Below are positions 12,309-42,938 of a stretch of 52,160 nt of DNA, piece by piece. The translations under genes were made by a program, and so were the position numbers. Location: NCBI RefSeq assembly GCF_004010195.1, contig NC_057717.1, positions 32,763,469-32,815,628 of the forward strand, given 5' to 3'. Under the pieces are notes generated by a model that worked only from the letters and a program-made list of their open reading frames with translations, was not told the DNA's origin and did no database searches. Within the stretch, counting starts at the first letter, position 1. Every line of letters begins with the position of its first letter. Source of the stretch: Chiloscyllium plagiosum. Taxonomy: Eukaryota.

Positions 12309-12946
12309 GGTTAGTTGAGTGGTCAGCAGGCTGCAGGGCTGGATGGCTGAGAGGTGGGTAGTGTGCCAGGCTGGTAAGTTGAAAGGTGAGGGCAGTGCGG
12401 AGATGGTTGGGTTGAGGTGGGCTGGCTGCTAGGCTGGTTTGTTGAGTTGTCAACAGGGTACCAGGCTGGTCAGTTGAGAGAAGGGCAGGGTGTCAGGCTG
12501 GTTAGTTGAGAGTTCAATAGGGTATCAGTCTGGTTAGTTCAGTGCTGCTCAGGGTATCGGAGCGGTTAGTTGAGAATTTGGCAGAGTACCTGGGTGTTTA
12601 GTTGAGAAGTGGGCAGTGTGCCGGGCTCTTTAGTTGAGATTTTGGCAGGATGTCAGACTGGTTATTTGAGAGGTCGGAAGAGTGTCGGACTGGTTAATTG
12701 AGAGGTGGTCGGGTGTTTGGCTGGGGTTTGAGTGGGAAGCAGGGTGCTGGGCTGGTTGTTTGAGCGGTTTGCAGGGTGTCGGACTGATTAGTTGAGAGGT
12801 GAGCAGGGTGCCAGCCTGGTTATTTGAGAGGTGGGCAGGCTGTTGGGTTGGTTAGTTGAGAGGTGGACAGTGTGTCAGGCTGGTTAGTTGACAGGTGGGT
12901 GACCAGTCTGGTTGGTGATTTGAGTGGCTCAGAAAGGTATTCGGCT
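12309..12946 (+). repeat. G-rich 32-bp minisatellite, about 20 degenerate units (switch-region-like), upstream of Cmu1 copy 2
   Basis: Units align to the consensus GGTTAGTTGAGAGGTGGGCAGGGTGTCAGGCT, with strong G/T skew on the + strand. Confidence 0.92.
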
Positions 12947-13659
12947 GTGGATATGATGACAAAACGTAAAGCTCGGAGTTTGACGAAGTCATAGGCGGAT
13001 AAAGGGAAGTCGGGAAAAGAGCCATAATGCAATATGCACAGGTTGACTTGGGTAAGTTGAGAGTTCAGTGGTGAAGGTCTAAGGTCATGTCCGAGGGAGT
13101 GGCGTCCTGTCAGGGATTGTCAAAATTCTGGTGCCAGGACCAGGTTCACCACGGACCAGGTGCAGGGTGGCAGGGGTGGAATTGAGTGAAAGGAATCGGG
13201 ATTACTTTCTCGTCCATAATATGGATTGTCTTGAATGTGTGTTATGCCTTGTGATGGGAATCCTGTCTTCCAAGGGTGAATGAGTGTATCACAGTGTAGG
13301 GATTGTCAAAGTGAATGGAAAGTGACGTCGAGACAGAAAGTCAGAGCAGTGATTAATCTGACAGATTAGAGTTTTGCAATAAACTGCGTGTCAGTTTGAT
13401 AGTTATTGAAGTTAAAGAGTATTTGTTAATTTCTCGAATCATATTTACATAAATGCTCAGTTCAGCTAGCTGTCACACTCCAAAGTCTCCGAACCTTTAA
13501 TGGTCCTCTTTGTTTCAGAGGCCCCCAGAATTCAGATAATTGTCAAGTCGATCAATGAGCTTCCAGGCAATTAGCATGATATCAGCTGTGACAGATATTC
13601 TCTCAGGCCCAGTGCTCTGCAACTGCCTTATTTCTAGAGGGCGGATTTTGGCTGACATT

Positions 13660-13775
13660 GATAAGCTGGGAAGGTACAATGGACTCGAAACGTTCACTCT
13701 GGTTTCTCTCCACAGATGCTGCCAGTTGTCGGGTTTCTCCAGCAACTTCGGTTTTCATTTCCAATTCCAACTTCC
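13660..13775 (+). mobile_element. Degenerate Penelope-type terminal remnant
   Basis: gactcgaaacgttcactctggtttctctccacagatgctgccag...tccagcaacttcggtttt, with the same cgaaacgt...gatgctgcc...tccagca layout as the other Penelope termini. Confidence 0.55.
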
Positions 13776-14114
13776 ACGTTTTCTTGGTTTGTATTTTGTG
13801 AAAACTCTATGCTCGTCACTTGCAATCCAATGAAAGTGTCAGTTGGTGAGATTTTCAGCAGTTACTCTTCGTCAGATCAAGGTGTTCCTATTTCTAAATT
13901 AAATAGTAATGGTCAAGGTAGAGGGCATGTTTCTTCAGAGGGAACCAATAGATCATGATCAACGACTGATTGGAAACAAAAATAAATTCAAGGTATACTA
14001 AAGGTGTTAGCAGGAACACACTGGTATACGTTTACAACTGAGGAAACATTTGGGTAACCAAAAAGGTCGAATTAACAGAAACTAACTTGCTCAACTGGTC
14101 ATTCTATCCTTGAG

Positions 14115-14421
14115 ACTGCATCTCCCCCTAAACTTTATGGACTTGTCTTCTCCTGTCAGCAACACAACACTGACGGTTCTGTGATCTTTGGTTGTTTGGC
14201 CATGGACTATAACACTGACGTTACCAAGGTGACCTGGAAGAAAGGTGGAGTGCCAATCACGACTGCAGTGAAGACTTATCCATCCGTGAGGAACAACAAG
14301 GGAACTTACACCCTGAGCAGCCAGTTGACCCTGCCTGAGTCAGAGGCAGATTGCAGCGAACTCTCCTGTGAGGTTCAACACAGCGGGTCAAAGCAGAGCA
14401 CTGGAATGCTGTGTAAATCTT
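14115..14421 (+). pseudogene. IGHM: IgM Cmu1 exon (copy 2), open reading frame
   Basis: Reads [102 protein letters not shown]. The C1-set Cys/Trp/Cys and shark Cmu1 motifs are present. Exact splice boundaries are inferred. Confidence 0.92.
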
Positions 14422-14619
14422 GTAGGAACTGAGGTGAACAGCACACCTGTGGTTAACATGAATAGGGCATTAGTTATAACACATTTGACATCGTCATAGA
14501 GATATAGAGTACAGGAAAAGTTCCTGTGGTCCATCCAGTCCACACCTGTCAATAACAGCACCCTAACTATTCCAGTCCAGTATATCCGCAATTGACGCAT
14601 TGCTTTGTGTGACTTGACA

Positions 14620-16300
14620 TTTCTTATGTGCATCTGCATATTTCTCACATGTTATGCGGTGCCTAAACTCTTCAAGACTTACTCACACTGAGCTGCAGAT
14701 TCACACACTCTGTGTGATTTTGGTTTCCCCAATATCCTCCTGTCCTTACCTTAACCCTATGCCCTTGAGACATTGCTCCATCCATTCAGGGGAAAGGATT
14801 TGTCTTGTTTACTCTGTGTATGTCTACCGTAATTCGAGACATCACAATCATCTTCTCTCTCATTCTTCTCTGTTCCAAGTAAAACCCCAGTGTGGTTAAT
14901 GACATTCCATAACTTAAAAACTTCCAGTCCAGGAAAAGTCCTGGAAAATCTCAATAATGCTGCCTTCTGTCTAATCACATTCCTTCCATAACATGCAGTC
15001 CTATACATCACACAATGCTTCATGTCTGGCCTAACCAGTGTTTTATTAATTTCCAGTATCATCTCCCAACACCTAATGTAAATGTCTTGGATCATTAAAG
15101 CTATTACCCGACACACATTCTTAGTCTTTTTATCCACCTGCCACATTACTACAAGGGATCGATGGGCATGCACACCAAAAATCCTCAGTTCTTTTCACGG
15201 TTCCACCATTCAAAACATAATACGTCTTAGTTTCTTCTGACCAAGTGCATCACCTTACACTTATCCAGAATGATTTCCATTTTCTATCTCTTAACACAAG
15301 CAGCCAACCCTTCTGTACCTTGCTGCAATCTAAAGCTATCATGCTCACTACTTACCAACACGGCAATTTTCGTTTCATCTGTGAACTTACTGGCCAAATC
15401 TCTTGCATTGTATTCTAAATCGAGTTTACATAATAGAAACATCAATAAATCAACACTGATCCCTGCAGAACACCACGAGACATTTACTCCCATCCACACA
15501 AACATTCTATGACCATTACCCTCTGCACTCCGCCATTCAGCTAACTCAGTATTCAATTAATCAAATTAACTTGATCTCATCTGGCTCTGATCTTTACTAT
15601 CAACTGGAAATCGACTTACGTCTTCGATAACTAACATGACTTCCCCTCAATGAAATCGTGCTGACAATTTTTGATTAACCTTCCAGATGAAGGTTAATTC
15701 CCCTCTCCATAGTTACAATGTTTTCCCTACTACAATGCCGAACTTAAGCCGAGCCTGTGGTTTCATTGCTTTTCTCTTCGTCTGTCCTGCAAAACAATAC
15801 CACATTGGCAGTTTTACCATATCCCCAGGTGGCCAGGATTTATAAATTGTTGCCAGCCACCCACGACTTCATCCTTTGTTTGGCATACATTTTATCTACC
15901 CTGGAAATATTACTATTTTTTCATCCAGCAACACAGCACATCACATCATCTATCCTAATTTCTGAAAAAAAATCACAACACTTCACAATGTTTTCTATGT
16001 CCACATATTCCCTCACACTGGTGAACATCAACAATCTTCACCGCTCCCACTCCATCTTCATTTTTCCCTGTCTCACTTGAAGGCATTACATTTGGAATAT
16101 TGAACTGCCACTCCTGCCCCTCTCTCAGCATGTCTCCATGATTTCAATTGCACACTTCCTCCTTTGTACCGTTAACTCATCAGCATTGTTTATCATACTC
16201 CTTTCATTAAAATGAATACCATCCAAACTTGCTATCTCTCCCTCTGACTTAACTGGCCTATCATTTTTGTGCCTTATTGACCTCCTTGCTCTACCTCTAA
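14620..16300 (-). mobile_element. Old degenerate CR1 fragments in the Cmu1-Cmu2 intron (paralogue ~35330-36670)
   Basis: Minus-strand remnants SKFTDETKIA and KTLVRPDMKHCV, plus a CR1 3' region. Confidence 0.7.
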
Positions 16301-17254: not shown

Positions 17255-17310
17255 GTCCACTTCTCCAACAACCCTTCTTCTGATCATGAGTCCCAGTGAA
17301 GAAATCGCAA
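17255..17310 (+). pseudogene. IGHM: IgM Cmu2 exon, 5' portion (copy 2)
   Basis: tttttcataaag| acceptor, then SPTTLLLIMSPSEEIA. It joins SSRFATIVC at 21528 once the CR1 is removed. Confidence 0.85.
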
Positions 17311-20300
17311 CATAGAACATATAACATAGAACAATACAGCACAGAACAGGCCTTTCGGCACATGATGTTGTGCCGAACATTTGTCCTAGCTTAAGCACCT
17401 ATCCATGTACCTATCCAATTGCCACTTAAAGGTCATCAATGATTCTGACTCTGCCACTCCCACAGGCAGCGCATACCATGCCCCCCCCACTCTCTGGGGA
17501 AAGAACATACCCCTGACATCTCCCCTATACCTTCCACCCTTCACCTTTATTTTTTTGTCGCCTTGTAACACTCTGTTGTACCTGGGGAATAAGCCTCTGA
17601 CTGTCTACTCTATCTATTACCCTAATCATCTTATAAACCTCTATCAAGTCACCCCTCATCTTTCGCCGTTCCAATGAGAAAAGGCCTAGCACTGTCAACC
17701 TATCCTCGTACGACCGATTCTCTATTCCAGGCAACATCCTGGTAAATCTCATCTGTACCCTCTCCAAAGCTTCCACATCTTTCCTAAAATGAGGCAACCA
17801 GAACTGCACACAGTACTCCAGGTCCTGTACAGCTGCAACATCACCTCACGACTCTTGAATTCAATCCCTCTGCTAATGTACATTACTACGCCACAGGCCT
17901 TCTTACAATCTCTATCCACCTGAGTGGCAAGTTTCAAAAAGCTATGAACATAGACCCCAAGATCCCTCTGCTCCTCCAACTTACTAAGAACCCTACCGTT
18001 AACCCTGTACTCCGCATTCTTATTTGTCTTTCCAAAATGGACAACCTCACACTTGACAGGGTTGAACTCCATCTTCCACTCCTCAACCAAGCTCTGCATC
18101 ATATCTAAGTCCCTTTGCAGCCGACAACAGCCCTCCTCACTACCTAAAAACTCCACCAATCTTCGTATCGTCTGCAAAATTTCCTGACACAACGTTCGAA
18201 TCCCTCTTCCAAGTCATTAATAAACATTACAAACAGCAGAGGACCCAGAACTGATCCCTGCGGAACTCCACTTGTAACTGGGCTCCAGGCTGAATATTTA
18301 CCATCTACCACCACTCTCTGACTTCGACCGATTAGCCAGTTCTCTATACAGCTGGCCAAATTTCCCACTATCCCATGCTACCTGACTTTCCGCATAAGCC
18401 TACCATGGGGAACCTTATCAAATGCCTTCTTAAAATCCATGTACATTACATCCACTGTTCTACCCTCTTCCACATGCTTGGTCACCTCCTCAAAGAATTC
18501 AATAAGACTTGTACGGCAAGACCTACCCCTCACAAATACTTTCTGGCTGTCCCTAATCAAGCAATGTCTTTCCAGATACTCATAAATTCTATCCCTCAGT
18601 ACCCTTTCCATTACTTTGCCTATCACCGAAGTAAGACTAACTGGCCTATAATTCCCGGGGTTATCCCTATTCCCTTTTTTGAACAGGGATGTAACATCCG
18701 TCACTCTCCAGTGCCCTGGTACCACCCTCGTTGACAGTGAAGACGAATAGATCATTGCCAACGGCTCTGCAATTTCTCTCTTGCTTCTCACATAATCCTA
18801 GGATATATCCCGCCAGGCCCGGGGGACTTGTCTTTCCTCAAGTTTTTCAAAATGCCCAACACATCTTCCTTCCGAACAAGTATCTCCTCCAGCTTACCAG
18901 TCTGTTTCATACTCTCCTCTTCAACAATACGGTCACTCTCATTTGTAAATACTGAAGAAAAGTACTCATTCAAGACCTCTCCTGTCTCTTCCGACTCAAC
19001 ACACAGTCCCCCACTACTGTCCTTGATCGAACCTACCCTCGTTCTCGTCATTCTCATGTTTCTCACATACGTATAAAAGGCCTTGGGGTTATCCTTGATC
19101 CTCCCCGCCAAATATTTTTCATGCCATCTCTAAGCTCTCCTAATCCCTTTCTTCAGCTCCCTCCTGGCTATCCTGTATCCCTCCAATGCTCGTCTGAACC
19201 TTGTTTCCTCAACCTTATGTAAGCCTTCTTTTTCCTCTTTACAGGACATTCAACCTCCCTCCTCAACCAAGGTTCCCTCACACGACCATCTCTTTCCTGC
19301 CTGACAGGTACATACATATCAAGGGCACGTCGTATTCGTTCCTTGAAACATTTCCACATTTCAATGACATCCTTCCCTGACAGCCTATGCTCCCAACTTA
19401 TGCTCCTCAGATCTTGTCTTGCAGCACTCCCTCATCCAAGTCATTAATAAAAATTACGAACAGCAGAGGACCCAGAACTGATCCCTGCGGAACTCCACTT
19501 GTAACTGGGCTCCAGGCTGAATATTTACCATCTACCACCACTCTCTGACTTCGATTGGTTAGCCAGTTCTCTATCCAACTGGCCAAATTTCCCACTATCC
19601 CATGCTACCTGACTTTCCGCATAAGCCTACCATGGGGAACCTTATCAAATGCCTTATTAAAATCCATGTACATTACATCCACTGATCTACCCTCATCCAC
19701 ATGCTTGGTCACCTCCTCAAAGAATTCAATAAGACTTGTACAGCAAGACCTACCCCTCACAAATCCTTGCTGGCTGTCCCTAATCATGCAGTGTCTTTCC
19801 AGATACTTATAAATCCTATCCATCAGTACCCTTTCCATTACTTTGCCTATCACCGAAGTAAGACTAAGTGGCCTATAATTCCAGGGGTTATCCCTATTCC
19901 CTTTTTTGAACAGGGATGCAACATTCGTCACTCTCCAGTGCCCTGGTACCACCCCCGTTGACAGTGAAGACGAATCGATCATTGCCAACGGCTCTGCAAT
20001 TTCTCTCTTGCTTCTCACATAATCCTAGGATATATCCCGCCAGGTCCGGGGGACTTGTCTATCCTCAAGTTTTTCAAAATGCCCAACACATCTTCCTTCC
20101 TAACAAGTATCTCCTCCAGCTTACCAGTCTGTTTAATACTCTCCTCTTCAACAATACGGTCACTCTCATTTGTAAATACTGAAGAAAAGTACTCATTCAA
20201 GACCTCTCCTATCTCTTCCGACTCAACACACAGTCCCCCACGACTGTCCTTGATCGAACCTACCCTCGTTCTCGTCATTCTCATGTTTCTCACATACGTA

Positions 20301-21527
20301 TAAAAGGCCTTGGGGTTATCCTTGATCCTACCCGCCAAAGATGTTTCATGCCATCTCTAAGCTCTCCTAATCCCTTTCTTCAGCTCCCTCCTGGCTATCC
20401 TGTATCCCTCCAACGCTCTGTCTGAACATTGTTCCCTCAACCTTATGTAAGCCTTCTTTTTCCTCTTTACAGGACATTCAACTCCCTCGTCAACCAAGGT
20501 TCCCTCACACGACCATCTCTTTCCTGCCTGACAGGTACATACATATCAAGGGAACGTCGTATTCGTTCCTTGAAACATTTCCACATTTCAATGACATCCT
20601 TCCCTGACAGCCTGTGCTCCCAACTTATGCTCCTCAGATCTTGACTTGCAGCATCGTATTTACCCTTCCCCCAATTGTAAAACCTACCCTGTTGCACGCA
20701 CCTATCTCTCTCCGTAACCAAGGTGAAAGTCTCAGAATTATGGTCACCATCACCAAAATGCTCATCCACTAACAAGCCCTTCACTTTTCCCGGTTCGTTA
20801 CCAAGTACCAAATCCAATATGGCCGCCCCTCTGGTCGGACAACCCACATACTGAGTTAGAAAGGATTCCTGGACACACTGCACAAACACCGCCCCGTCGA
20901 ATCTACTTGATTTAAAGAGCTTCCAATCAATATTTGGGAAGTTGAAATCGTCCATGACTACTACCCTGTGGCTTCTGCACTTTTCTAAAATCTGTTTCCC
21001 AATCTGTTTCTCCACATCTCTGCTGCTATTGGGTGGCCTATATAAAACACCCAACATGGTGACTGTTCCTTTCCTGTTTCTGACTTCATCCCATATTACC
21101 TCCAAAGGGAGATCCCCCTCGAACTGCCTTTCTACAACCGTTATACCATTTCTAATTAGCAACGCCACACACCCCTTCTTTTTTACCACCCTCCCTCATC
21201 TTATTGAAACATCTATAATCAGGGACCTCCAACAATCATTTCTGTCCCTCTTCTTTCTACGTTTCCGTGATGGCCACAACATCGTAGTCCCAAGTACCGA
21301 TCCACGCCTTAAGTTCACCCACCTTATTTCTGATACTCCTTGCGTTGAAGTATACACACTTGAACTCATCTCTGTGTCTGCAAGTATTCCCTGTCAGTAC
21401 TACTTTCTCCACAGCATCCCAACATTCTTGGACATCCTGAAAAACAGCTAACCTACTTGCTGGACTACAAGTCTGGATCCCATCCCCCTGCCAAATTAGC
21501 TTCAACCACCGCCCATGAAGAGTGCTA
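17311..21527 (-). mobile_element. CR1 LINE (5'-truncated, APE + RT) inserted antisense in Cmu2 copy 2, with an internal ~1227-bp tandem duplication
   Basis: Motifs YFNARSIRNK, VAITET, YRPPN, DFNFPNIDW, NYRPVSLTS, DFxKAFDKVPH and [10 protein letters not shown]. The (catagaa)-type 3' tail is at 17311. Paired ORFs are offset by 1227 bp. Confidence 0.95.
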
Positions 21528-21782
21528 GCAAGTAGTCGGTTTGCAACCATTGTCTGTTCAATCATTGAATTCCATCTGAAGCAAATCTCCATGATTTTGT
21601 TGAAAAATGACCAATCCGTGGATTCTGGTGTCTTCACATCTCCTGTGTGTGAGGTGAATGGGAATTTCTCGGTAATGAATCGGCTGACCGGCTGTTATGG
21701 CGAATGGTTCAACAGCGCATGTTTACCTGCCAGGTCACTCACGGAAAGAACACTCAAAGTCAAAACATCAGCACACCCCAGG
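21528..21782 (+). pseudogene. IGHM: IgM Cmu2 exon, 3' portion (copy 2)
   Basis: Reads [47 protein letters not shown]... The core Trp is lost and there is a 1-nt deletion before the second Cys. G|GTAAG donor. Confidence 0.9.
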
Positions 21783-21849
21783 GTAAGACATACATACGAG
21801 AGCACTAGAAATCATTCTGAACTCCGATGTGAATCAGATACACACATTT

Positions 21850-22931
21850 ATCAAACTTAGTCAACAGCACTAAAGTGTGCAGCATCGCATTCACAAACGT
21901 GTCATGCATTTCAGTTTGAGTGTGACATTAGCATTGCTCATAATTCAACATTATGTCTAATCAGAAGAGTATGTTTTCCTCTGTATTGAAGACATGTGAG
22001 CTGGCTTAACAGTCTTTTTTATAAAGTGGTTTGATGGCTGACCACACTTGGAGAGGCATTAGAGTGCCGAATCAATGCCTGGTGAGTTTATTTAGCGGCT
22101 GGGGAGGGGTGCTTGTCTTGTGTGGGCCGGAGCATTAGGGTCACAGTGGTATTATTTTGAAACTTAAAACATAGAGAAAGGCCGAGTTTTGCTGAACGTG
22201 GAGTTTTGACAAGTCGGCGAGAGTAGGACACGAGGGCATAGCCTCGAAGTCAATGGGTGCACCATTTGTAACTGAGGTGGGGAAGAATTTCTTCAGCCAG
22301 AGAGTGGTGGAATTCATTACCACAGACGGTTATGGAGGCCAAGTCAGTGACTGTATTTAAGATGGCGATTGATCGGTAAGGACATGGAGAATCAAACTTA
22401 GTCAACAGCACGAAAGTGTGCAGCATCGCATTCACAAACGTGTCATGCATTTCAGTTTGAGTGTGACATTAGCATTGCTCATAATTCAACATTATGTCTA
22501 ATCAGAAGAGTATGTTTTCCTCTGTATTGAAGACATGTGAGCTGGCTTAACAGTCTTTTTTATAAAGTAGTTTGATGGCTGACCACACTTGGAGAGGCAT
22601 TCGAGTGCCGAATCCATGCCTGGTGAGTTCATGTAGCGGGTGGGTAGGGGTGCTTGTCTTGTGTGGGCCGGGGCATTAGGGTCACAGTGGTATTATTTTG
22701 AAACTTAAAACATAGAGAAAGGGCGAGTTTGGGTGAACGTGGAGTTTGGACAAGTCGGCGAGAGTAGGACACAAGGGCATAGCCTCGAAGTCAATGGGTG
22801 CACCATTTGTAACTGAGGTGGGGAAGAATTTCTTCAGTCAGAGAGTGGTGGAATTCTCTCCCACAGACGGTTATGGAGGCCAAGTCAGTGACTGTATTTA
22901 AGATGGCGATTGATCGGTAAGGACATGGAGA
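21850..22931 (+). repeat. Direct tandem duplication, 2 x ~541 bp, specific to copy 2
   Basis: atcaaacttagtcaac...ggacatggaga occurs at 21850-22390 and 22391-22931, but only once in copies 1 and 3. Confidence 0.92.
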
Positions 22932-24152
22932 AGGCTGGAGAATGTGGGAGAGAAACATATCACACATGATCGAATGGCAGGGCAGACTCGATTGGCCGAA
23001 TTGCCTCATTCTGCTACTATATCTTACTATCTTGTGGTCTCAAAATAACAAGGTAAAATATGCAGTGACCCTTTTTGCAAAATAAATCAAAATGTGTTCA
23101 ATGCTTCATTTCCTGCTCAGGAATGACCTGTTGGACTTGGGCATTGTACATCATAGATTTTATCTGGTAGTGAGCTCTTTAACTTCATTCATGGGAGCAG
23201 GCCGCAGAGCAAGTTGCTATCACATTTGATCAATCCGGATAAACAGGACCTAATTGAAACTCTTTAAGGTACTCTCTGCAATTAGTGGATGTGGCAGGAG
23301 AAAACATTTTAGTGGGATGGCTGCAGTAGCGATGAACGAACGAGGAATTAGAGTCAGGCCTATTCAGCCTGGTGTCAGGATGGAGATGTTCACACAGTGA
23401 TCAGTGGAAGTCTGAATAATGCTCACGCAAATTTCCATTAATTTGTATAAAAAATGTTAGATACACGTATTTGTTTTGTTTTTATTCTCCTAAGAAATTC
23501 AATTTTTGGTTTTTAGACCTACCACAAATTTGACAGGAGGAATAATATCTCATGTTATGTTTTTGAGAATGATCTCACACCAATAATACAAATAATTTAC
23601 AATAACGTTAAACACATTGAACAGAATTTCTGTGACTGATAACTGCCCCGTAACACCTTTAAACGCCTGCAAACGCATGAGAAAAAAGAAAATAATTATG
23701 ATTGATTACAGTTTGTTAAAAGTTGGGGATGGAATTTGACATTCAGAATGCCCAGCAGCATTTGCAAGTAAGTTTCATGAATATAGAAATGAAGTCGTTA
23801 TATTCGGATTAAGCTTGGCAAAAGTATCAAAGTATGGTCCTAAGTGAGAGAAGAGCTCTGAAAGGAAGGTAATTCCATGTGTCACGTCATGGTATCTTTG
23901 ATTTTACTTTTTCACAGGTTTCCCTAGTTACAAACCCAGAGTTCTTTATGAATGATTACATGGGTGATGTTATAGATAATAACAAATGTTTTCACAAATC
24001 AAAATATATCAGCAAGAGGAACCATCATTTCAGCAACATTTGGAAGCTGCCATGTCAAAGGTGGTTTCTTCACTTCATGAGTGAATAGCCTGAAGACTCG
24101 GTGTTTTGATCCTAAAGAGGCATTTTTCATTGATTTGATTTCTGTTTCAGAG

Positions 24153-24460
24153 GAGTTACTGATTGTCACGATTACACAGTTACACTCCGACCACCGCCAT
24201 TAGAACACATCTTACTGGAGGCGACGGTGACATTAACCTGTGTTGTGTCCAATCTTTCTTCTGGTGCCAATGTCACCTTGTACAAGAAAAGAAGACTCTG
24301 AAATCAGAGATCTCTAATCGGCCTAGAGAAAATCCCGACAGCGTGACTAGCAAATTCAGCACTTCTACTGAAGCCTGGATGAGTCACGTTAGTTTTGAAG
24401 GTTTGGTGAACCATCTGTATCTACTGACTCCACTGAGAGACTCCATTCACAAGGAAAATG
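24153..24460 (+). pseudogene. IGHM: IgM Cmu3 exon (copy 2), frameshifted
   Basis: Reads [51 protein letters not shown]...TEAWMSHVSFEGLVNHLYLLTPLRDSIHKEN, then G|GTGAG donor. It has a 1-nt deletion and the second Cys changed to Gly. Confidence 0.92.
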
Positions 24461-24925
24461 GTGAGCGGTGAGATGAAAAAACAAGGCATCCTATGTGTCA
24501 TCTCGATCCAGTAAAATACATGACATGCTTGGATTGGCTCCTAATAACATTGGGAGCATTAAACATGTGTCTGATGTCAGGATAGCTAAATATCTGATTG
24601 AGAACAAGATGGACCAAAGCTTGTTCTTTTTTCATTATAAGTCAAATAAAGTGTGAAAAAGCCTGGTTTGTGTTTTTAACATCAGCAATGACAAATGTAC
24701 AGGAGGTCTTAGTTATAGGTTGGAAACAGGAAACATGGAGGCGATTTTCTAATTAAACCCTTTACTCTTAATGATTAGGATGGATATCATTCTGCTCGAT
24801 CAGAAAATGAGAGTGTATAAATCCCAAATTTAAAAACAAAACTGGCACATTTTAATATGTCTGAAATTGCAATATTAATTTTGGATTTTTATAGTGGATT
24901 TATATTTGTTTCAAATATTCTGCAG

Positions 24926-24962
24926 GAGAAACGCTACTGGAGCCATCAGTGTCGATCCTCCT
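24926..24962 (+). pseudogene. IGHM: Truncated IgM Cmu4 5' stub
   Basis: ttctgcag|gagaaacgctactggagccatcagtgtcgatcctcct is identical to the start of the full exon at 28054 and is then followed by unrelated sequence. Confidence 0.88.
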
Positions 24963-27574: not shown

Positions 27575-28090
27575 TCACAAGGAAAATGGTGAGCGGTGAG
27601 ATGAAAAAACAAGGCATCCTATGTGTCATCTCGATCCAGTAAAATACATGACATGCTTGGATTGGCTCCTAATAACATTGGGAGCATTAAACATGTGTCT
27701 GATGTCAGGATAGCTAAATATCTGATTGAGAACAAGATGGACCAAAGCTTGTTCTTTTTTCATTATAAGTCAAATAAAGTGTGAAGAAGCCTGGTTTGTG
27801 TTTTTAACATCAGCAATGACAAATGTCCAGGAGGTCTTAGTTATAGGTTGGAAACAGGAAACATGGAGGCGATTTTCTAATTAAACTCTTTACTCTTAAT
27901 GATTAGGATGGATATCATTCTGCTCGATCAGAAAATGAGAGTGTATAAATCCCAAATTTAAAAACAAAACTGGCACATTTTAATATGTCTGAAATTGCAA
28001 TATTGATTTTGGATTTTTATAGTGGATTTATATTTGTTTCAAATATTCTGCAGGAGAAACGCTACTGGAGCCATCAGTGTCGATCCTCCT
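27575..28090 (+). repeat. Near-identical duplicate of 24447-24962 (Cmu3 3' tip, intron and Cmu4 start)
   Basis: tcacaaggaaaatggtgagcgg...gtcgatcctcct is repeated with only a handful of substitutions. Confidence 0.92.
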
Positions 28091-28445
28091 GCCACCAACA
28101 GAAGACATTTCCGCTAAGAGGTTTCTCTCCCTCACCTGTTTAGTGAGAGGCTTCTCTTCCCGAGAGATCTTAGTCAAGTGGACAAACAATGACAAGCCAG
28201 TTAATCCCAGTAACTACAAGAACACCGAGGTGATGGCGGAAAGCGAGAGCACCTCCTTCTTCATGGACACCCTGTTGTGCATTACAACAGAGGAGTGGGC
28301 CAGTGGTGCTTCTTATTCCTGTGTGGTGGGACATGAAGCGATTCCACTGAAGATCATCAACAGAACAGTCGATAAATCCAGCGGTAAATCAAGTTTTGTG
28401 AACATTTAACTTGCACTGATGGGCATTATTAATTCATGTCAATAA
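28054..28445 (+). pseudogene. IGHM: IgM Cmu4 plus secretory tailpiece (copy 2), premature stop in the tailpiece
   Basis: Reads [49 protein letters not shown]...[50 protein letters not shown]. The internal membrane donor G|GTAAA is at 28383/4 and AATAAA at 28481. Confidence 0.95.
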
Positions 28446-33173: not shown

Positions 33174-33826
33174 GGTTAGTTGAGTGGTCAGCAGGCTGCA
33201 GGGCTGGATGGTTGAGAGTTGGGTAGTGTGCCAGGCTGGTAAGTTGAAAGGTGAGAGCAGTCCGGAGCTGATTGGGGTGAGGTGGACTGTCCTGTTCCCT
33301 GGATGCTGCCTGACCTGCTGTGCTGTTCCAGCAATAAAGTTTCAACAATTGTTGAGTTGTCAACAGGGTAACAGGCTGGTCAGTTGAGAGAAGGGCAGGG
33401 TGTCAGGCTGGTTAGTTGAGAGTTCAATAGGGTATCAGTCTGGTTAGTTCAGTGGTGCTCAGAGTGTCGGAGCGGTTAGTTGAGAATTTGGCAGAGTACC
33501 TGGGTGTTTAGTTCAGAAGTGGGTAGTGTGCCGGGCTCTTTAGTTGAGATGTTAGCAGGATGTCAGATTGGTTATTTGAGAAGTGGTTGGGTGTTCAGCT
33601 GGGGAGTTGCGTGGGAAAAAGGATGCTGGGCTGGTTAGATGAGCGGTTTGCAGGGTGTCTGACTGATTAGTTGAGAGGTGAGCAGGGTGCCAGCCTGGTT
33701 ATTTGAGAGGTGGGCAGGTTGTTGGGTTGGTTAGTTGAGAGGTGGACAGTGTGTCACACTGGTTAGTTGAGAGGTGGGTGGCCAGTCGGGTTGGTGCGTT
33801 GAGTGGCTCAGAAGGGTATTGGGCTG
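33174..33826 (+). repeat. G-rich 32-bp minisatellite (switch-region-like), upstream of Cmu1 copy 3
   Basis: Same unit as 12309-12946, with one unit fewer near 33580 and a ~60-bp Penelope-type fragment at ~33287-33348. Confidence 0.92.
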
Positions 33827-34824
33827 TGGATATAATGACAAAACGTTAAGCTCGGAGTCTGACGAAGTCACAGGCGGTAAAGGGAAGTTGGGAACAGAGC
33901 TATAGTGCAATATGCACAGNNNNNNNNNNNNNNNNNNNNNNNNNNNNNNNNNNNNNNNNNNNNNNNNNNNNNNNNNNNNNNNNNNNNNNNNNNNNNNNNN
34001 NNNNNNNNNNNNNNNNNNNNNNNNNNNNNNNNNNNNNNNNNNNNNNNNNNNNNNNNNNNNNNNNNNNNNNNNNNNNNNNNNNNNNNNNNNNNNNNNNNNN
34101 NNNNNNNNNNNNNNNNNNNNNNNNNNNNNNNNNNNNNNNNNNNNNNNNNNNNNNNNNNNNNNNNNNNNNNNNNNNNNNNNNNNNNNNNNNNNNNNNNNNN
34201 NNNNNNNNNNNNNNNNNNNNNNNNNNNNNNNNNNNNNNNNNNNNNNNNNNNNNNNNNNNNNNNNNNNNNNNNNNNNNNNNNNNNNNNNNNNNNNNNNNNN
34301 NNNNNNNNNNNNNNNNNNNNNNNNNNNNNNNNNNNNNNNNNNNNNNNNNNNNNNNNNNNNNNNNNNNNNNNNNNNNNNNNNNNNNNNNNNNNNNNNNNNN
34401 NNNNNNNNNNNNNNNNNNNNNNNNNNNNNNNNNNNNNNNNNNNNNNNNNNNNNNNNNNNNNNNNNNNNNNNNNNNNNNNNNNNNNNNNNNNNNNNNNNNN
34501 NNNNNNNNNNNNNNNNNNNNNNNNNNNNNNNNNNNNNNNNNNNNNNNNNNNNNNNNNNNNNNNNNNNGCAGTTACTCTTCGTCAGATCAGGGTGTTCCTA
34601 CTTCTAAATTATATAGTAATGGTCAAGGTAGAGGGCATGTTTCTTAAGAGGGAACCAATAGATCATGATCAACGACTGATTGGAAACAAAAATAAATTCC
34701 AGGTATACTAAAGATGTTAGCAGGAACACACTGGTATACGTTCACAAATGCGGGAACATTTGGGTAACCAATAAGGTTGAATTTACAGAAACTAACTTGC
34801 TCAGCTGGTCATTCTATCCTTGAG

Positions 34825-35132
34825 ACTGCATCTCTCCCCAAACTTTATGGACTTGTCTTCTCCTGTCAGCAACACAACACTGACGGTTCTGTGATCTTTG
34901 GTTGTTTGGCCATGGACTATAACACTGACGTTACCAAGGTGACCTGGAAGAAAGGTGGGGTGCCAATCACGACTGCAGTGAAGACTTATCCATCCGTGAG
35001 GAACAACAAGGGAACTCACATCCTGAGCAGCCAGTTGACTCTGCCTGAGTCAGAGGCAGATTGCAGCAAACTCTCCTGTGAGGTTCAACACAGCGGATCA
35101 AAGCAATAAAACTGGAATGCTATGTAAATCTT
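34825..35132 (+). pseudogene. IGHM: IgM Cmu1 exon (copy 3), premature stop
   Basis: Reads [16 protein letters not shown]...GCLAMDY...W...[14 protein letters not shown] at 35107-35109 plus one extra base relative to copy 2. Confidence 0.92.
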
Positions 35133-40847: not shown

Positions 40848-41103
40848 GCAAGTAGCAGGTTTGAAACCATCGTCTGTTCAATCATTGATTTCCATCTGAA
40901 GCAAATCTCCATGAGTTGGTTGAAAAATAGCCAATCCGTGGATTCTGGTGTCTTCACATCTCCCATGTGTGAGGTGAATGGGAAATTCTCGGTAATGAAT
41001 CGGCTGACCGCATGTTATGGTGAATGATTCAACAGCGCAGTGTTTACCTGCCAGGTCACTCACGGAAAGAACACTCAAAGTCAAAACATCACCACACCCC
41101 AGG
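40848..41103 (+). pseudogene. IGHM: IgM Cmu2 exon, 3' portion (copy 3), Trp changed to stop
   Basis: Reads [34 protein letters not shown]...[29 protein letters not shown], then G|GTAAG. Confidence 0.92.
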
Positions 41104-42938
41104 GTAAGACATACATACGAGAGCACTAGAAATCATTCTGAACTCCGATGTGAATCAGATACACACATTTATCAAACTTAGTCAACAGCACTAAAGTGTG
41201 CAGCATCCCATTCACAAACGTGTCATGCATTTCAGTTTGAGTGTGACATTAGCATTGCTCATAATTCAACATTATGACTAATCAGAAGAGCATGTTTTCC
41301 TCTATATTGATGGCATGTGAGCTGGTTTAATAGTCTTCTTTTTAAAGTTGTTTGATGGCTGACCACACTTGGAGAGGCATTAGAGTGCTGAATCCACGCC
41401 TGGTTACTTCATTTAGCGGGTGGGTGAGGGGTGCGTGTCTTTTGTGGCCCGGGGGCTTAGGGTCACAGAGGTATTTTTTTGAAACTTAAAACATAGAGAA
41501 AGGCCGAGTTTGGGTGAACGTGGAGTAAATGTTTTGACAAGTCGGCGAGAGTAGGACACGAGGGCATAACCTCCAAGTCAAAGGGTGCACCATTTGTAAC
41601 TGAGGTGGGGAAGAACTTCTTCAGCCAGAGGGTGGTGGAATTCATTCCCACAGACGGTTATGAAGGCCAAGTCAGTGATTGTATTTAAGATGGCGATTGG
41701 TCGGTTAGTACATGGAGAAGGCTGGAGAATGTGGTAGAGAAACATATCACACATGATCGAATGGCAGGGCAGACTCGTTTGGCCGAATTGCCTCATTCTG
41801 CTCCCATATCTTACTATCTTGTGGTCTCAAAATAACAAGGTAAAATATGCAGTGACCCTTTTTGCAAAATAAATCAAAATGTGTTCAATACTTCATTTCC
41901 TGCTCAGGAATGACCTGTTGGACTTGGGCATTGTACATCGTAGATTTTATCTGGTACTGAGCTCTTTAACTTCATTCATGGGAGCAGGTCGAAGAGCAAG
42001 TTGCTATCACATTTGATCAATCCGGATAAACAGGACCTAATTGAAACTCTTTAAGGTACTCTCTGCAATTAGTGGATGTGGCAGGAGAAAACATTTTAGT
42101 GGGAAGGCTACAGTAGCGATGAACGAACGAGGAACTAGAGTCAGGCGTATTCAGCCTGGTGTCCGGATGGAGATGTTCACACAGTGATCAGTGGAAGTCT
42201 GAATAATGCTCACACAAATTTCCATTAATTCGTAGAATAATGTTAGACACTCGTATTTGTTTTGTTTCTATTCTACTAAGAAATTCACTGTTTTGTTTTT
42301 AGACCTACTACAAATTTGACAGGAGGAATAATATCTCATGGTATGCTTTTGAGAATGATCTCACACCAATAATACAAAGAATTTACAATAACGTTAAACA
42401 CATTGAACAGACTTTCTGTGACTGATAACTGCTCCGTAACACCTTTAAACGCCTGCAAACACAAGAGAACAAAGAAAATAATTATGATTGATTACGGTTT
42501 GTTAAAATTTGGGGATGTAACTTGGCATTCAGAATGCCAGGCAGCATTTGCAAGTAAGTTTCATGAACATAGAAATGAAGTCGTTATATTCAGATTAAGC
42601 TTGTCAAAAGTATCAAAGGATGGTCCTAAGTGAGAGAAGAGCTCTGAAAGGAAGGTAATTCCATGTGTTACGTCATGGTATCTTTGATTTTACTTTTTCA
42701 CAGGTTTCACTAGTTGCAAAGCCAGTGTTCTTTATGAATGATTATATGGGTCATGTTATAGATAATAACAGATGTTTTCACAAATCAAAATATATCAGCA
42801 AGAGGAACCATCATTTCAGCAACATTTGGACGCTGCCATGTCAAAGGTGGTTTCCTCACTTCATGAGTGAATAGCCTGAAGACTCGGTGTTTTGATCCTA
42901 AAGAGGCATTTTTCATTGATTTGATTTCTGTTTCATAG

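What the first reader, a model, noticed from the sequence alone, without database searches (positions are those of the whole stretch)
12309..12946. Switch-region-like G-rich 32-bp array upstream of shark Cmu1
Seen: about 20 tandem degenerate units of consensus GGTTAGTTGAGAGGTGGGCAGGGTGTCAGGCT. The array is G-rich on the sense (non-template) strand and ends about 1.2 kb 5' of Cmu1. Each consensus unit holds four RGYW motifs (GGTT, AGTT, GGCA, GGCT). The array recurs before Cmu1 of copy 3 (33174-33826). Known: tetrapod S-mu regions are repetitive, rich in AID hotspots (RGYW/WRCY) and lie just 5' of Cmu, and mammalian ones are G-rich on the non-template strand and form R-loops/G4. Sharks are generally said to lack classical S regions, although switch-like recombination between clusters in the J-C intron has been reported in nurse shark. 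Inference: this could be a proto-switch or AID-targeting element. Caveat: palindromic AGCT, the key S-region motif, is essentially absent from the units.
Basis: partly seen in the sequence, partly recalled or inferred. Interest (0 to 1): 0.85.

Follow-up and report, generated by a model that had tools for sequence, protein, structure and literature searches.

The report
G-rich minisatellite before shark IgM exon
A real, roughly 20-unit, 32-base G-rich tandem repeat sits just upstream of the first constant exon in several copies of a shark antibody (IgM-like) gene; it looks like an old, ordinary "core-type" minisatellite that only partly resembles the switch regions of land vertebrates.

Summary
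TRF finds a 32-bp array at 12308-12899/12924 (18.6 copies, 68% matches) and its paralogue at 33364-33803. It ends 1,167 bp 5' of an Ig C1-set exon.

The array is the most G-rich stretch of the window, at 42.5% G on the sense strand. It is not a dispersed repeat: contig depth on it is like the low-copy flanks, while nearby transposon pieces reach 10^5-10^6.

The switch-region reading is only partly supported:
- RGYW is dense on one strand only (62 against 10 WRCY).
- AGCT counts are 0 and 2, and WGCW and GGG runs fall below shuffles.
- G in GYW context is at background, 0.27 against 0.28.
- A unit with 4 RGYW arises in 3.9% of shuffled units.
- The paralogous arrays align unit for unit and diverge faster than the flanking intron, 7.3% against 4.8%.
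- The surrounding C genes carry frameshifts, stops and a retroelement.

The consensus unit shares 14 exact bases with the human 33.15 minisatellite consensus.

My verdict: an old core-type minisatellite copied along with the gene cluster. Any S-like function is untested. First readers of this scan noted similar arrays at four other IgM sites in this genome; those notes are unchecked.

The parts
12309..12946 (+). 32-bp G-rich degenerate tandem array, cluster copy 2 (about 19-20 units; 64-bp higher-order pairs at the 3' end)
   Evidence: TRF; sequence; unit profile hits; 42.5% G, the top of 431 windows
33174..33826 (+). Paralogous array, cluster copy 3. It aligns unit for unit with copy 2, lacks one exact 32-bp unit and carries about 45 extra non-repeat bases near 33290-33350
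   Evidence: 92.7% identity to copy 2 over aligned columns
10900..13450 (+). Wider domain of positive GC skew (+0.1 to +0.59) around the array; G-rich on the sense strand
   Evidence: Composition profile
14114..14413 (+). Ig heavy-chain CH1 (Cmu1-like) exon of copy 2: open frame, acceptor AG at 14112-14113, donor GT at 14414
   Evidence: Pfam C1-set E=7.8e-13; 66% identity to a Mustelus asterias Ig heavy-chain-like protein
34824..35124 (+). CH1 exon of copy 3, with a 1-nt insertion and a stop a few codons before the exon end
   Evidence: Pfam C1-set E=3.5e-11
11445..11584 (.). Fragment of a very high-copy interspersed repeat in the same intron. It serves as the contrast for the copy-number test
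   Evidence: Summed contig depth 1.4-8.6 million in the bins 11351-11584, against 17-147 in low-copy flanks; many loose ends at 11445/11481
11819..12065 (+). Old interspersed-repeat piece ending about 240 bp before the array. I read it as a LINE 3' tail by eye and from recall; I did not test that
   Evidence: Depth about 58,000-73,000 in 11819-11935, falling to 365-2,660 by 12286; sequence
13574..13807 (.). Another high-copy repeat piece between the array and CH1
   Evidence: Depth 7,500-168,000
17255..21520 (-). Reverse-transcriptase-bearing retroelement next to or within the Cmu2-like exon of copy 2. It is a context sign that these C genes are damaged

Best explanation
The array is an old, decaying, G-rich 'core-type' minisatellite in the intron 5' of the first constant exon of an IgM-like gene.

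How it most likely came about (inferred): a G-rich seed of the kind found in classical hypervariable minisatellites was amplified to about 20 units of 32 bp by replication slippage or unequal exchange. This happened before the local C-region unit was duplicated. The array was then carried along passively each time the cluster was copied. Since then its units have drifted apart by point substitution, with an occasional whole-unit gain or loss and no homogenisation.

What it would do if transcribed from an upstream VDJ (inferred): its 42% G sense strand would give a G-rich RNA over a C-rich template. It would also place many WRCY sites on the template strand only. At most it would be a weak, one-sided AID or R-loop target, not a tetrapod-style switch region.

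Shown: the anatomy, the age relative to the duplication, the low copy number, the motif statistics, the lack of constraint and the core-motif match. Inferred: the origin by slippage and selective neutrality.
For: (1) Tandem structure, 32-bp period and 68% matches among units.

(2) Units of copy 2 and copy 3 align one to one at 92.7% identity, with one exact 32-bp indel. The array therefore predates the duplication and has not been homogenised since.

(3) No constraint. There are 44 mismatches in 606 aligned array positions (7.3%) against 138 in 2,854 (4.8%) in the upstream intron, Fisher p=0.02. Against all intron aligned, p=0.03.

(4) The consensus unit shares an exact 14-nt run with the tandem 33.15 human minisatellite consensus, which I took from the abstract of PMC2235864. 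0 of 3,000 shuffled units reach 14, and P(>=13)=0.0003. In the window the 14-mer occurs 2 times exactly and 11 times with up to 2 mismatches inside the arrays, against 2 elsewhere. A chi-like GCTGGT occurs 6 and 4 times against 0.4 +/- 0.6.

(5) Low copy number. Summed contig depth on the array is 33-804 (X1) and 134-330 (X5), against 17-147 on low-copy flanks and 10^5-10^6 on transposon pieces in the same stretch.

(6) Hotspot density is explained mostly by composition. GYW per G is 0.27-0.28 against 0.279 background. The unit-level chance of 4 RGYW is 0.039.

(7) The host genes look damaged, which fits drift:
- a stop and a 1-nt insertion in CH1 of copy 3;
- a broken Cmu2-like domain beside an RT-bearing retroelement;
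- a Cmu3-like exon of copy 2 split over two frames.
Against: The array is the extreme of the window for G content and for RGYW density. RGYW per G is 0.23 against 0.138 in the rest of the window.

The array sits where tetrapod S regions sit. Unchecked first-reader notes report similar arrays before CH1, or in the JH-Cmu intron, at four other sites: one just upstream of this window and three about 36.6-36.7 Mb away. If those clusters are old and functional, persistence of a recognisable array would hint at retention.

Faster divergence does not exclude a function that depends on composition or repetition rather than on exact sequence.

The single-stranded G-rich strand folds somewhat better than shuffles (z = -3.5, only 20 shuffles).

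I could not read the primary shark switching papers.
Confidence: 0.65

Rival explanations
1. Proto-switch or AID-targeting element. When transcribed from a rearranged VDJ, the G-rich array forms R-loops or stalls polymerase. It exposes DNA to AID and becomes a preferred break site for the cluster-to-cluster isotype switching reported in nurse shark.
For: It lies 1,167 bp 5' of CH1. It is G-rich on the non-template strand, with 42.5% G, GC skew up to 0.59, and the top rank among 431 windows. RGYW is 62 against 42.3 +/- 4.1 in dinucleotide shuffles and 3.5 times the window mean. It is locus-restricted. Other IgM clusters of this genome reportedly carry it, by unchecked notes. Reviews accept that sharks switch between clusters (passages in PMC4279169, PMC8201067, PMC4588147).
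Against: Hotspots are on the template strand only: 10 WRCY, and 19 of 74 sense-strand C in WRC. AGCT is 0 and 2. WGCW is 9 against 17.5 +/- 2.7. GAGCT is 0 and 1, and GGGGT is 1 in each array. GGG runs are 24 against 35.5 +/- 3.7.

The S-region review read here stresses that break formation needs deamination of both strands and abundant overlapping hotspots (PMC9827813).

Each array has one RIZ-like G cluster; array 1 alone holds a canonical G4 motif. The array is only 0.64 kb. There is no constraint between paralogues. No J or promoter lies within 8.5 kb upstream in copy 2, which by recall is far beyond the usual reach of promoter-proximal AID activity. There were 0 RNA reads on the array in the one RNA run laid, of which only about 2% was read. 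The clusters in this window look like pseudogenes.
Confidence: 0.15
2. Repeated protein-binding element, such as an intronic enhancer, insulator, matrix attachment region, or target of a zinc-finger protein that reads the conserved unit head.
For: The first 13 positions of the unit are better kept among units (12-15 of 15) than positions 14-32 (7-14 of 15). The array lies in the intron that holds the enhancer in tetrapod IgH (recalled).
Against: No B-cell motif I counted is enriched: E-box 2 and 3 against 1.6 +/- 1.3, octamer 0, GAGGAA 0, Ikaros-like 1, Myb-like 1 (these motif definitions are recalled). There is no constraint between paralogues. Uneven conservation along a unit is also what an amplification history alone would give.
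Confidence: 0.07
3. Part of a transposable element, either an internal or 3' tandem repeat of an interspersed element, so present wherever that element has landed.
For: A repeat piece ends about 240 bp upstream. Depth falls gradually from about 2,600 to 160-800 between 11936 and 12403.
Against: The array interior has depth like single- to few-copy DNA (33-113 in X1, 134-330 in X5), while true transposon pieces in the same stretch reach 10^4-10^6. No unit is found elsewhere in the 52 kb although the window is full of retroelement copies.
Confidence: 0.04
4. Assembly artefact, such as collapsed or mis-scaffolded repeats.
For: The window has 7 N gaps and internal duplications.
Against: Contigs from independent runs of the same organism span the array. 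X1 record 3 is 685 nt with 2 other letters over 12398-12671. X5 record 19 covers 12824-13137. Two diverged paralogous copies agree unit for unit.
Confidence: 0.01

Closest known systems
Classical G-rich 'core' hypervariable minisatellites (human 33.15-type loci)
   Same: It has tandem units of tens of bp, a G-rich strand and locus-specific arrays. The consensus unit shares an exact 14-nt run with the 33.15 consensus. It has a chi-like GCTGGT. Paralogues differ by whole units, and a variant contig skips 56 bases with 25 other letters in their place.
   Different: The unit is 32 bp, with a second, non-core half (the GGTTAGTTGAG head). The units are already 30% diverged, so it is probably no longer hypervariable. 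Allelic length polymorphism and meiotic instability were not tested.
Mammalian immunoglobulin switch regions (S-mu and others)
   Same: It is in the intron 5' of the first CH exon, is tandemly repetitive, and is G-rich on the non-template strand with strong GC skew.
   Different: It is 0.64 kb rather than kilobases (the kilobase figure is recalled). GAGCT, GGGGT and GGGCT pentamers are not enriched. AGCT is absent. Hotspots lie on one strand only. GGG runs are depleted. No germline promoter is known. The S-region features are taken from passages of PMC9827813.
Xenopus S-mu (AT-rich switch region)
   Same: It is a repetitive tract 5' of Cmu in an ectotherm.
   Different: Xenopus S regions are AT-rich (passage in PMC8201067). 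From recall, they depend on dense AGCT palindromes. The shark array is G-rich with 0-2 AGCT.
Nurse-shark inter-cluster isotype switching (Zhu et al. 2012; Zhang et al. 2013)
   Same: It is the process the array would have to serve.
   Different: Reviews state that shark Ig loci lack switch regions (PMC4279169, PMC4588147, PMC8201067). The primary papers are not held. I therefore could not see where junctions map, or whether intronic repeats were described.

Membership tests
Immunoglobulin switch (S) region | Lies in the intron 5' of the first exon of a CH gene | tested here: met
   The array ends 1,167 bp before the C1-set exon 14114-14413. The same order holds in copy 3.
Immunoglobulin switch (S) region | Long tandemly repetitive tract (kilobases in mammals; the figure is recalled) | tested here: not met
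   It is repetitive, but only 592-638 bp and 18.6 copies. No further units lie nearby.
Immunoglobulin switch (S) region | G-rich non-template strand with G/C skew (mammalian type) | tested here: met
   269 G against 74 C, skew 0.52-0.59, the highest G fraction of 431 windows.
Immunoglobulin switch (S) region | Enrichment of the pentamers GGG(G/C)T and GAGCT (PMC9827813) | tested here: not met
   Array 1: GAGCT 0, GGGGT 1 (5.6 expected from mononucleotide shuffles), GGGCT 4 (1.6-1.9 expected). Array 2 is similar.
Immunoglobulin switch (S) region | Dense overlapping AID hotspots (AGCT/WGCW) giving targets on both strands | tested here: not met
   AGCT 0 and 2. WGCW 9 against 17.5 +/- 2.7 in dinucleotide shuffles. 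RGYW 62 against WRCY 10. The arrays are not among the top windows for min(RGYW, WRCY).
Immunoglobulin switch (S) region | R-loop formation on transcription, with G clusters as initiation zones | tested here: inconclusive
   G density is at least 40%, but each array has only one three-cluster G3 motif, and array 1 alone holds a canonical G4 motif. GGG runs are depleted. The motif definitions are recalled. There is no wet-lab data.
Immunoglobulin switch (S) region | Own germline (I) promoter and sterile transcript upstream | not testable with these tools
   Only a bacterial-type promoter scan is available, and it is irrelevant here. The RNA run gave 0 reads on the array.
Immunoglobulin switch (S) region | Somatic recombination junctions and AID-dependent mutations in B cells | not testable with these tools
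   No B-cell DNA data were laid. Contigs cannot show rare somatic events.
Core-type G-rich minisatellite | Tandem array of 10-100 bp units at a single locus or a few loci | tested here: met
   32-bp units, 18.6 copies. Depth is like low-copy flanks.
Core-type G-rich minisatellite | Unit contains the shared G-rich core motif | tested here: met
   An exact 14-nt run matches the 33.15 consensus as given in the abstract of PMC2235864. 0 of 3,000 shuffled units reach 14.
Core-type G-rich minisatellite | Copy-number change by whole units | tested here: met
   There is an exact 32-bp indel between paralogues, and a variant contig in X1 (joint 12671/12728).
Core-type G-rich minisatellite | Allelic length hypervariability | not tested
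   This needs population or long-read data. The 30% divergence among units argues against current instability.

The most novel reading that the evidence does not exclude
The 32-bp G-rich array is a primordial switch-like tract. On this reading, a repeat kept 5' of Cmu1 in many IgM clusters of this shark forms R-loops or stalls polymerase when transcribed, and it focuses AID-dependent breaks for cluster-to-cluster switching. Repetitive, G-skewed S-type DNA would then predate tetrapods. The AGCT-rich, two-strand design would be a later refinement.
Probability: 0.1. Interest if true: 0.85.

Novelty: new member of a known kind. Interest (0 to 1): 0.35.

Why it matters
Reviews say that shark Ig loci have no switch regions, yet that sharks switch VDJs between clusters (passages read). 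How breaks are focused in the J-C intron is therefore an open question.

A G-skewed tandem array sitting just 5' of Cmu1, and reportedly recurring in other IgM clusters of the same genome, gives a concrete and cheap target. Junction maps, R-loop footprints or an S-region replacement assay could show whether repetitive G-rich DNA already served switching before tetrapods.

On present evidence it is more likely an ordinary old minisatellite. In that case its value is as a marker of IgM cluster genealogy, and as a caution that G-richness plus RGYW counts alone do not make a switch region.

Tried and rejected
- **Dispersed-repeat hypothesis: rejected.** Depth on the array matches the low-copy flanks, and no units occur elsewhere in the window.
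- **Assembly artefact: rejected.** Independent contigs carry the array.
- **tRNA-derived SINE near the array:** ARAGORN found 0 genes in 11200-14000.
- **Promoter scan:** it uses bacterial sigma-70 patterns, so it says nothing about a vertebrate I promoter. I ignored it.
- **Search for V, J and RSS in all six frames:** no VH- or JH-like match on the + strand, and no canonical RSS (heptamer with matching nonamer) was found. One search was the same search spoiled by a placeholder pattern of mine that matched the translated N runs and flooded the output. I repeated it cleanly.
- **Cross-species conservation: unresolved.** Organism B's contigs, at 85% likeness or more, cover 13028-14500 at about 86-90% identity but give depth 0-2.9 on the array. 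The flanks barely pass the threshold and the array evolves about 1.5 times faster, so this blank is uninformative.
- **Metagenome scan for two adjacent unit heads:** 0 hits. That collection is not expected to hold shark DNA.
- **Literature:**
  - Zhu et al. 2012 and Zhang et al. 2013 are not held.
  - Kokubu et al. 1988 and a recalled PMC id for a 2018 review are not held.
  - PMC2191167 has no text on introns or switching.
  - PMC9921937 gave no passages for my terms.
  - Full-text searches turned up no paper describing a G-rich tandem array 5' of shark Cmu1. This does not cover subscription journals, the unheld primary papers, or their supplements, which could hold junction maps and intron dot plots.
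- **B-cell transcription-factor motifs: not enriched**.

Full report
**Observation.**

Tandem Repeats Finder reports a 32-bp array at 12308-12899 (18.6 copies, 68% matches, score 350). A 64-bp higher-order row runs to 12924. A second array lies at 33364-33778/33803. Reading the sequence in 32-base register shows about 20 units over 12309-12946. It also shows the copy at 33174-33826, interrupted near 33290-33350.

The 13-base head of the unit, with up to 2 mismatches, matches 28 times in the window against 1.27 +/- 1.05 in shuffles. 26 of the 28 lie within the two arrays. A profile built from 15 units finds hits with E<0.1 only there.

The consensus unit has 4 RGYW and 0 WRCY. AGCT occurs 0 and 2 times.

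**Context.**

A self-comparison shows that the window holds tandem paralogous copies of a C-region unit. Copy 2 runs from 9417 to about 29250. Copy 3 runs from 30297 to about 46700. Copy 1 contributes only 1-3296. Seven N gaps interrupt the window.

The exon 1,167 bp downstream of the array (14114-14413) has an AG acceptor and a GT donor. It is an Ig C1-set domain. It is 66% identical to an Ig heavy-chain-like protein of Mustelus asterias. The last C exon (28023-28406) is 84% identical to a Chiloscyllium punctatum protein.

No source names any of these proteins IgM. No VH, JH or RSS is visible anywhere in the window, so 'J-C intron' is inferred.

The genes look damaged in three ways.
- CH1 of copy 3 has a 1-nt insertion and a stop.
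- The second C domain is partial, sits in two frames in copy 2 and has a stop in copy 3. It lies beside a minus-strand element with a reverse-transcriptase domain.
- The third C exon of copy 2 is split over two frames and gives no Pfam hit.

**Age and constraint.**

The two arrays align unit for unit. They differ by one exact 32-bp indel and about 45 extra bases in copy 3. Units within an array are only 68% alike, whereas matching units of the two copies are 92.7% alike. The array therefore predates the duplication and has not been homogenised since.

Its divergence between paralogues is 44 of 606 positions (7.3%). That is higher than the upstream intron, at 138 of 2,854 (4.8%), with Fisher p=0.02. 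It is also higher than all aligned intron, p=0.03. There is no sign of sequence constraint.

**Copy number and other data sets.**

I laid contigs of two runs of the same organism (X1, X5), one run of a second organism (X13), and raw reads of a single-cell poly-A RNA run (X17) on 11000-14500 at 85% likeness or more.

| Stretch | Summed contig depth |
|---|---|
| Array bins | 33-804 (X1), 134-330 (X5) |
| Low-copy flanks | 17-147 |
| 11351-11584 | millions |
| 11819-11935 | about 60,000-73,000 |
| 13691-13807 | about 130,000-170,000 |
| CH1 bins | 620-3,774 |

Individual contigs span it: X1 record 3 is 685 nt at depth 32.9, and X5 record 19 also covers it. It is therefore not an assembly artefact.

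Organism B covers 13028-14500 at about 86-90% identity but gives depth 0-2.9 on the array. Because the flanks barely pass the threshold, this says nothing about conservation.

The RNA run gave 0 reads on the array and a handful on CH1, all with paralogue-like differences. Only about 2% of that run was read.

**Switch-region features.**

For the S-like reading:
- A 600-nt window on the array has the highest G fraction of 431 windows (42.5%).
- It has the highest RGYW count, 58 against 16.8 +/- 7.2.
- It has the highest RGYW+WRCY sum, 68 against 33.4 +/- 7.2.
- RGYW exceeds dinucleotide-preserving shuffles: 62 against 42.3 +/- 4.1, and 57 against 39.6 +/- 4.1 in array 2.

Against it:
- WRCY on the sense strand is 10, not enriched.
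- WGCW is 9 against 17.5 +/- 2.7.
- GAGCT is 0 and 1, and GGGGT is 1 in each array.
- GGG runs are 24 against 35.5 +/- 3.7.
- Each array has one three-cluster G motif; array 1 alone holds a canonical G4 motif.
- G in GYW context is 0.27-0.28 against 0.279 in the rest of the window. RGYW per G is 0.23 against 0.138, so only the purine at the first position is enriched.
- 3.9% of shuffled units have 4 or more RGYW. The array-level statistic is one moderately unusual unit multiplied about 20 times.

The review PMC9827813 (passages) describes mammalian S regions as long, repetitive and enriched in GGG(G/C)T and GAGCT. It stresses that breaks need deamination on both strands. The array fails these points and meets only position, repetitiveness and G skew.

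**What it resembles most.**

The middle of the consensus unit shares an exact 14-nt run with the tandem consensus of the human 33.15 minisatellite. I took that consensus from the abstract of PMC2235864. 0 of 3,000 shuffled units reach 14.

In the real sequence the 14-mer occurs exactly 2 times. With up to 2 mismatches it occurs 11 times inside the arrays and 2 times elsewhere. A chi-like GCTGGT joins successive units, 6 and 4 times against 0.4 +/- 0.6 expected.

Taken together, these features fit a core-type G-rich minisatellite:
- the 32-bp period;
- the whole-unit indel;
- the higher-order 64-bp pairs;
- the low copy number.

That such cores are recombinogenic and were once compared with switch repeats is my recollection. 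No call tested it.

**Earlier notes of the scan.**

First readers noted similar arrays at four other places in this genome:
- 4,395 bases before this window (s1-883570, presumably copy 1);
- about 36.6-36.7 Mb away on the same piece (s1-885978, s1-883555, s1-886159).

Two of these are described as lying in a JH-Cmu intron. I could not read those sequences. If the notes are right, the array is a common feature of IgM clusters here. That fits shared ancestry and does not by itself show function.

**Literature limits.**

Reviews say that shark loci lack switch regions while switching between clusters occurs (passages of PMC4279169, PMC4588147 and PMC8201067). The primary papers and their supplements were not available. 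I cannot say whether junctions were mapped near such repeats, or whether such repeats were described. Five full-text searches found no such description.

**Verdict.**

It is locus-restricted and older than the local duplication. It is best read as a decaying core-type minisatellite carried in the intron 5' of Cmu1 (confidence 0.65).

It works like a switch region only in position, repetitiveness and strand composition. It fails the tested membership features of S regions. The proto-switch reading remains possible (about 0.1-0.15), and junction mapping would test it directly.

Noticed in passing
window 1-46700: There are three tandem paralogous copies of an IgM-like C-region unit with a period of about 17-20 kb. 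No VH, D, JH or RSS is visible between them. Seven N gaps could hide such segments.
   Followed up: partly
window 21519-21857 and 41000-41150: The second C domain is disabled differently in each copy. It is split over two frames in copy 2 and has an in-frame stop at the conserved Trp position in copy 3. Both lie beside an RT-bearing retroelement. A review passage (PMC5192425) recalls a natural shark IgM form that lacks a C domain.
   Followed up: partly
window 24134-24468: The third C exon of copy 2 is split over two frames and has lost the second canonical cysteine context. Pfam finds no domain in either piece.
   Followed up: partly
window 11445-11584: This is a fragment of an extremely abundant interspersed repeat. 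Summed contig depth is in the millions in both organisms A and B. It is also abundant in poly-A single-cell RNA reads on both strands.
   Followed up: no
window 14500-16000: A strongly C-rich stretch on the sense strand (GC skew down to -0.49) lies in the CH1-CH2 intron, mirroring the G-rich domain upstream of CH1. Minus-strand LINE-like ORFs lie there.
   Followed up: no
window 24447-24962 vs 27575-28090: A 516-bp internal duplication at 99.2% identity lies within copy 2, far closer than the 93-95% between copies. It is either a recent duplication or an assembly redundancy.
   Followed up: no
window 18201-19426 vs 19428-20653: A head-to-tail 1.2-kb duplication (96.5% identity) lies inside the retroelement of copy 2.
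   Followed up: no
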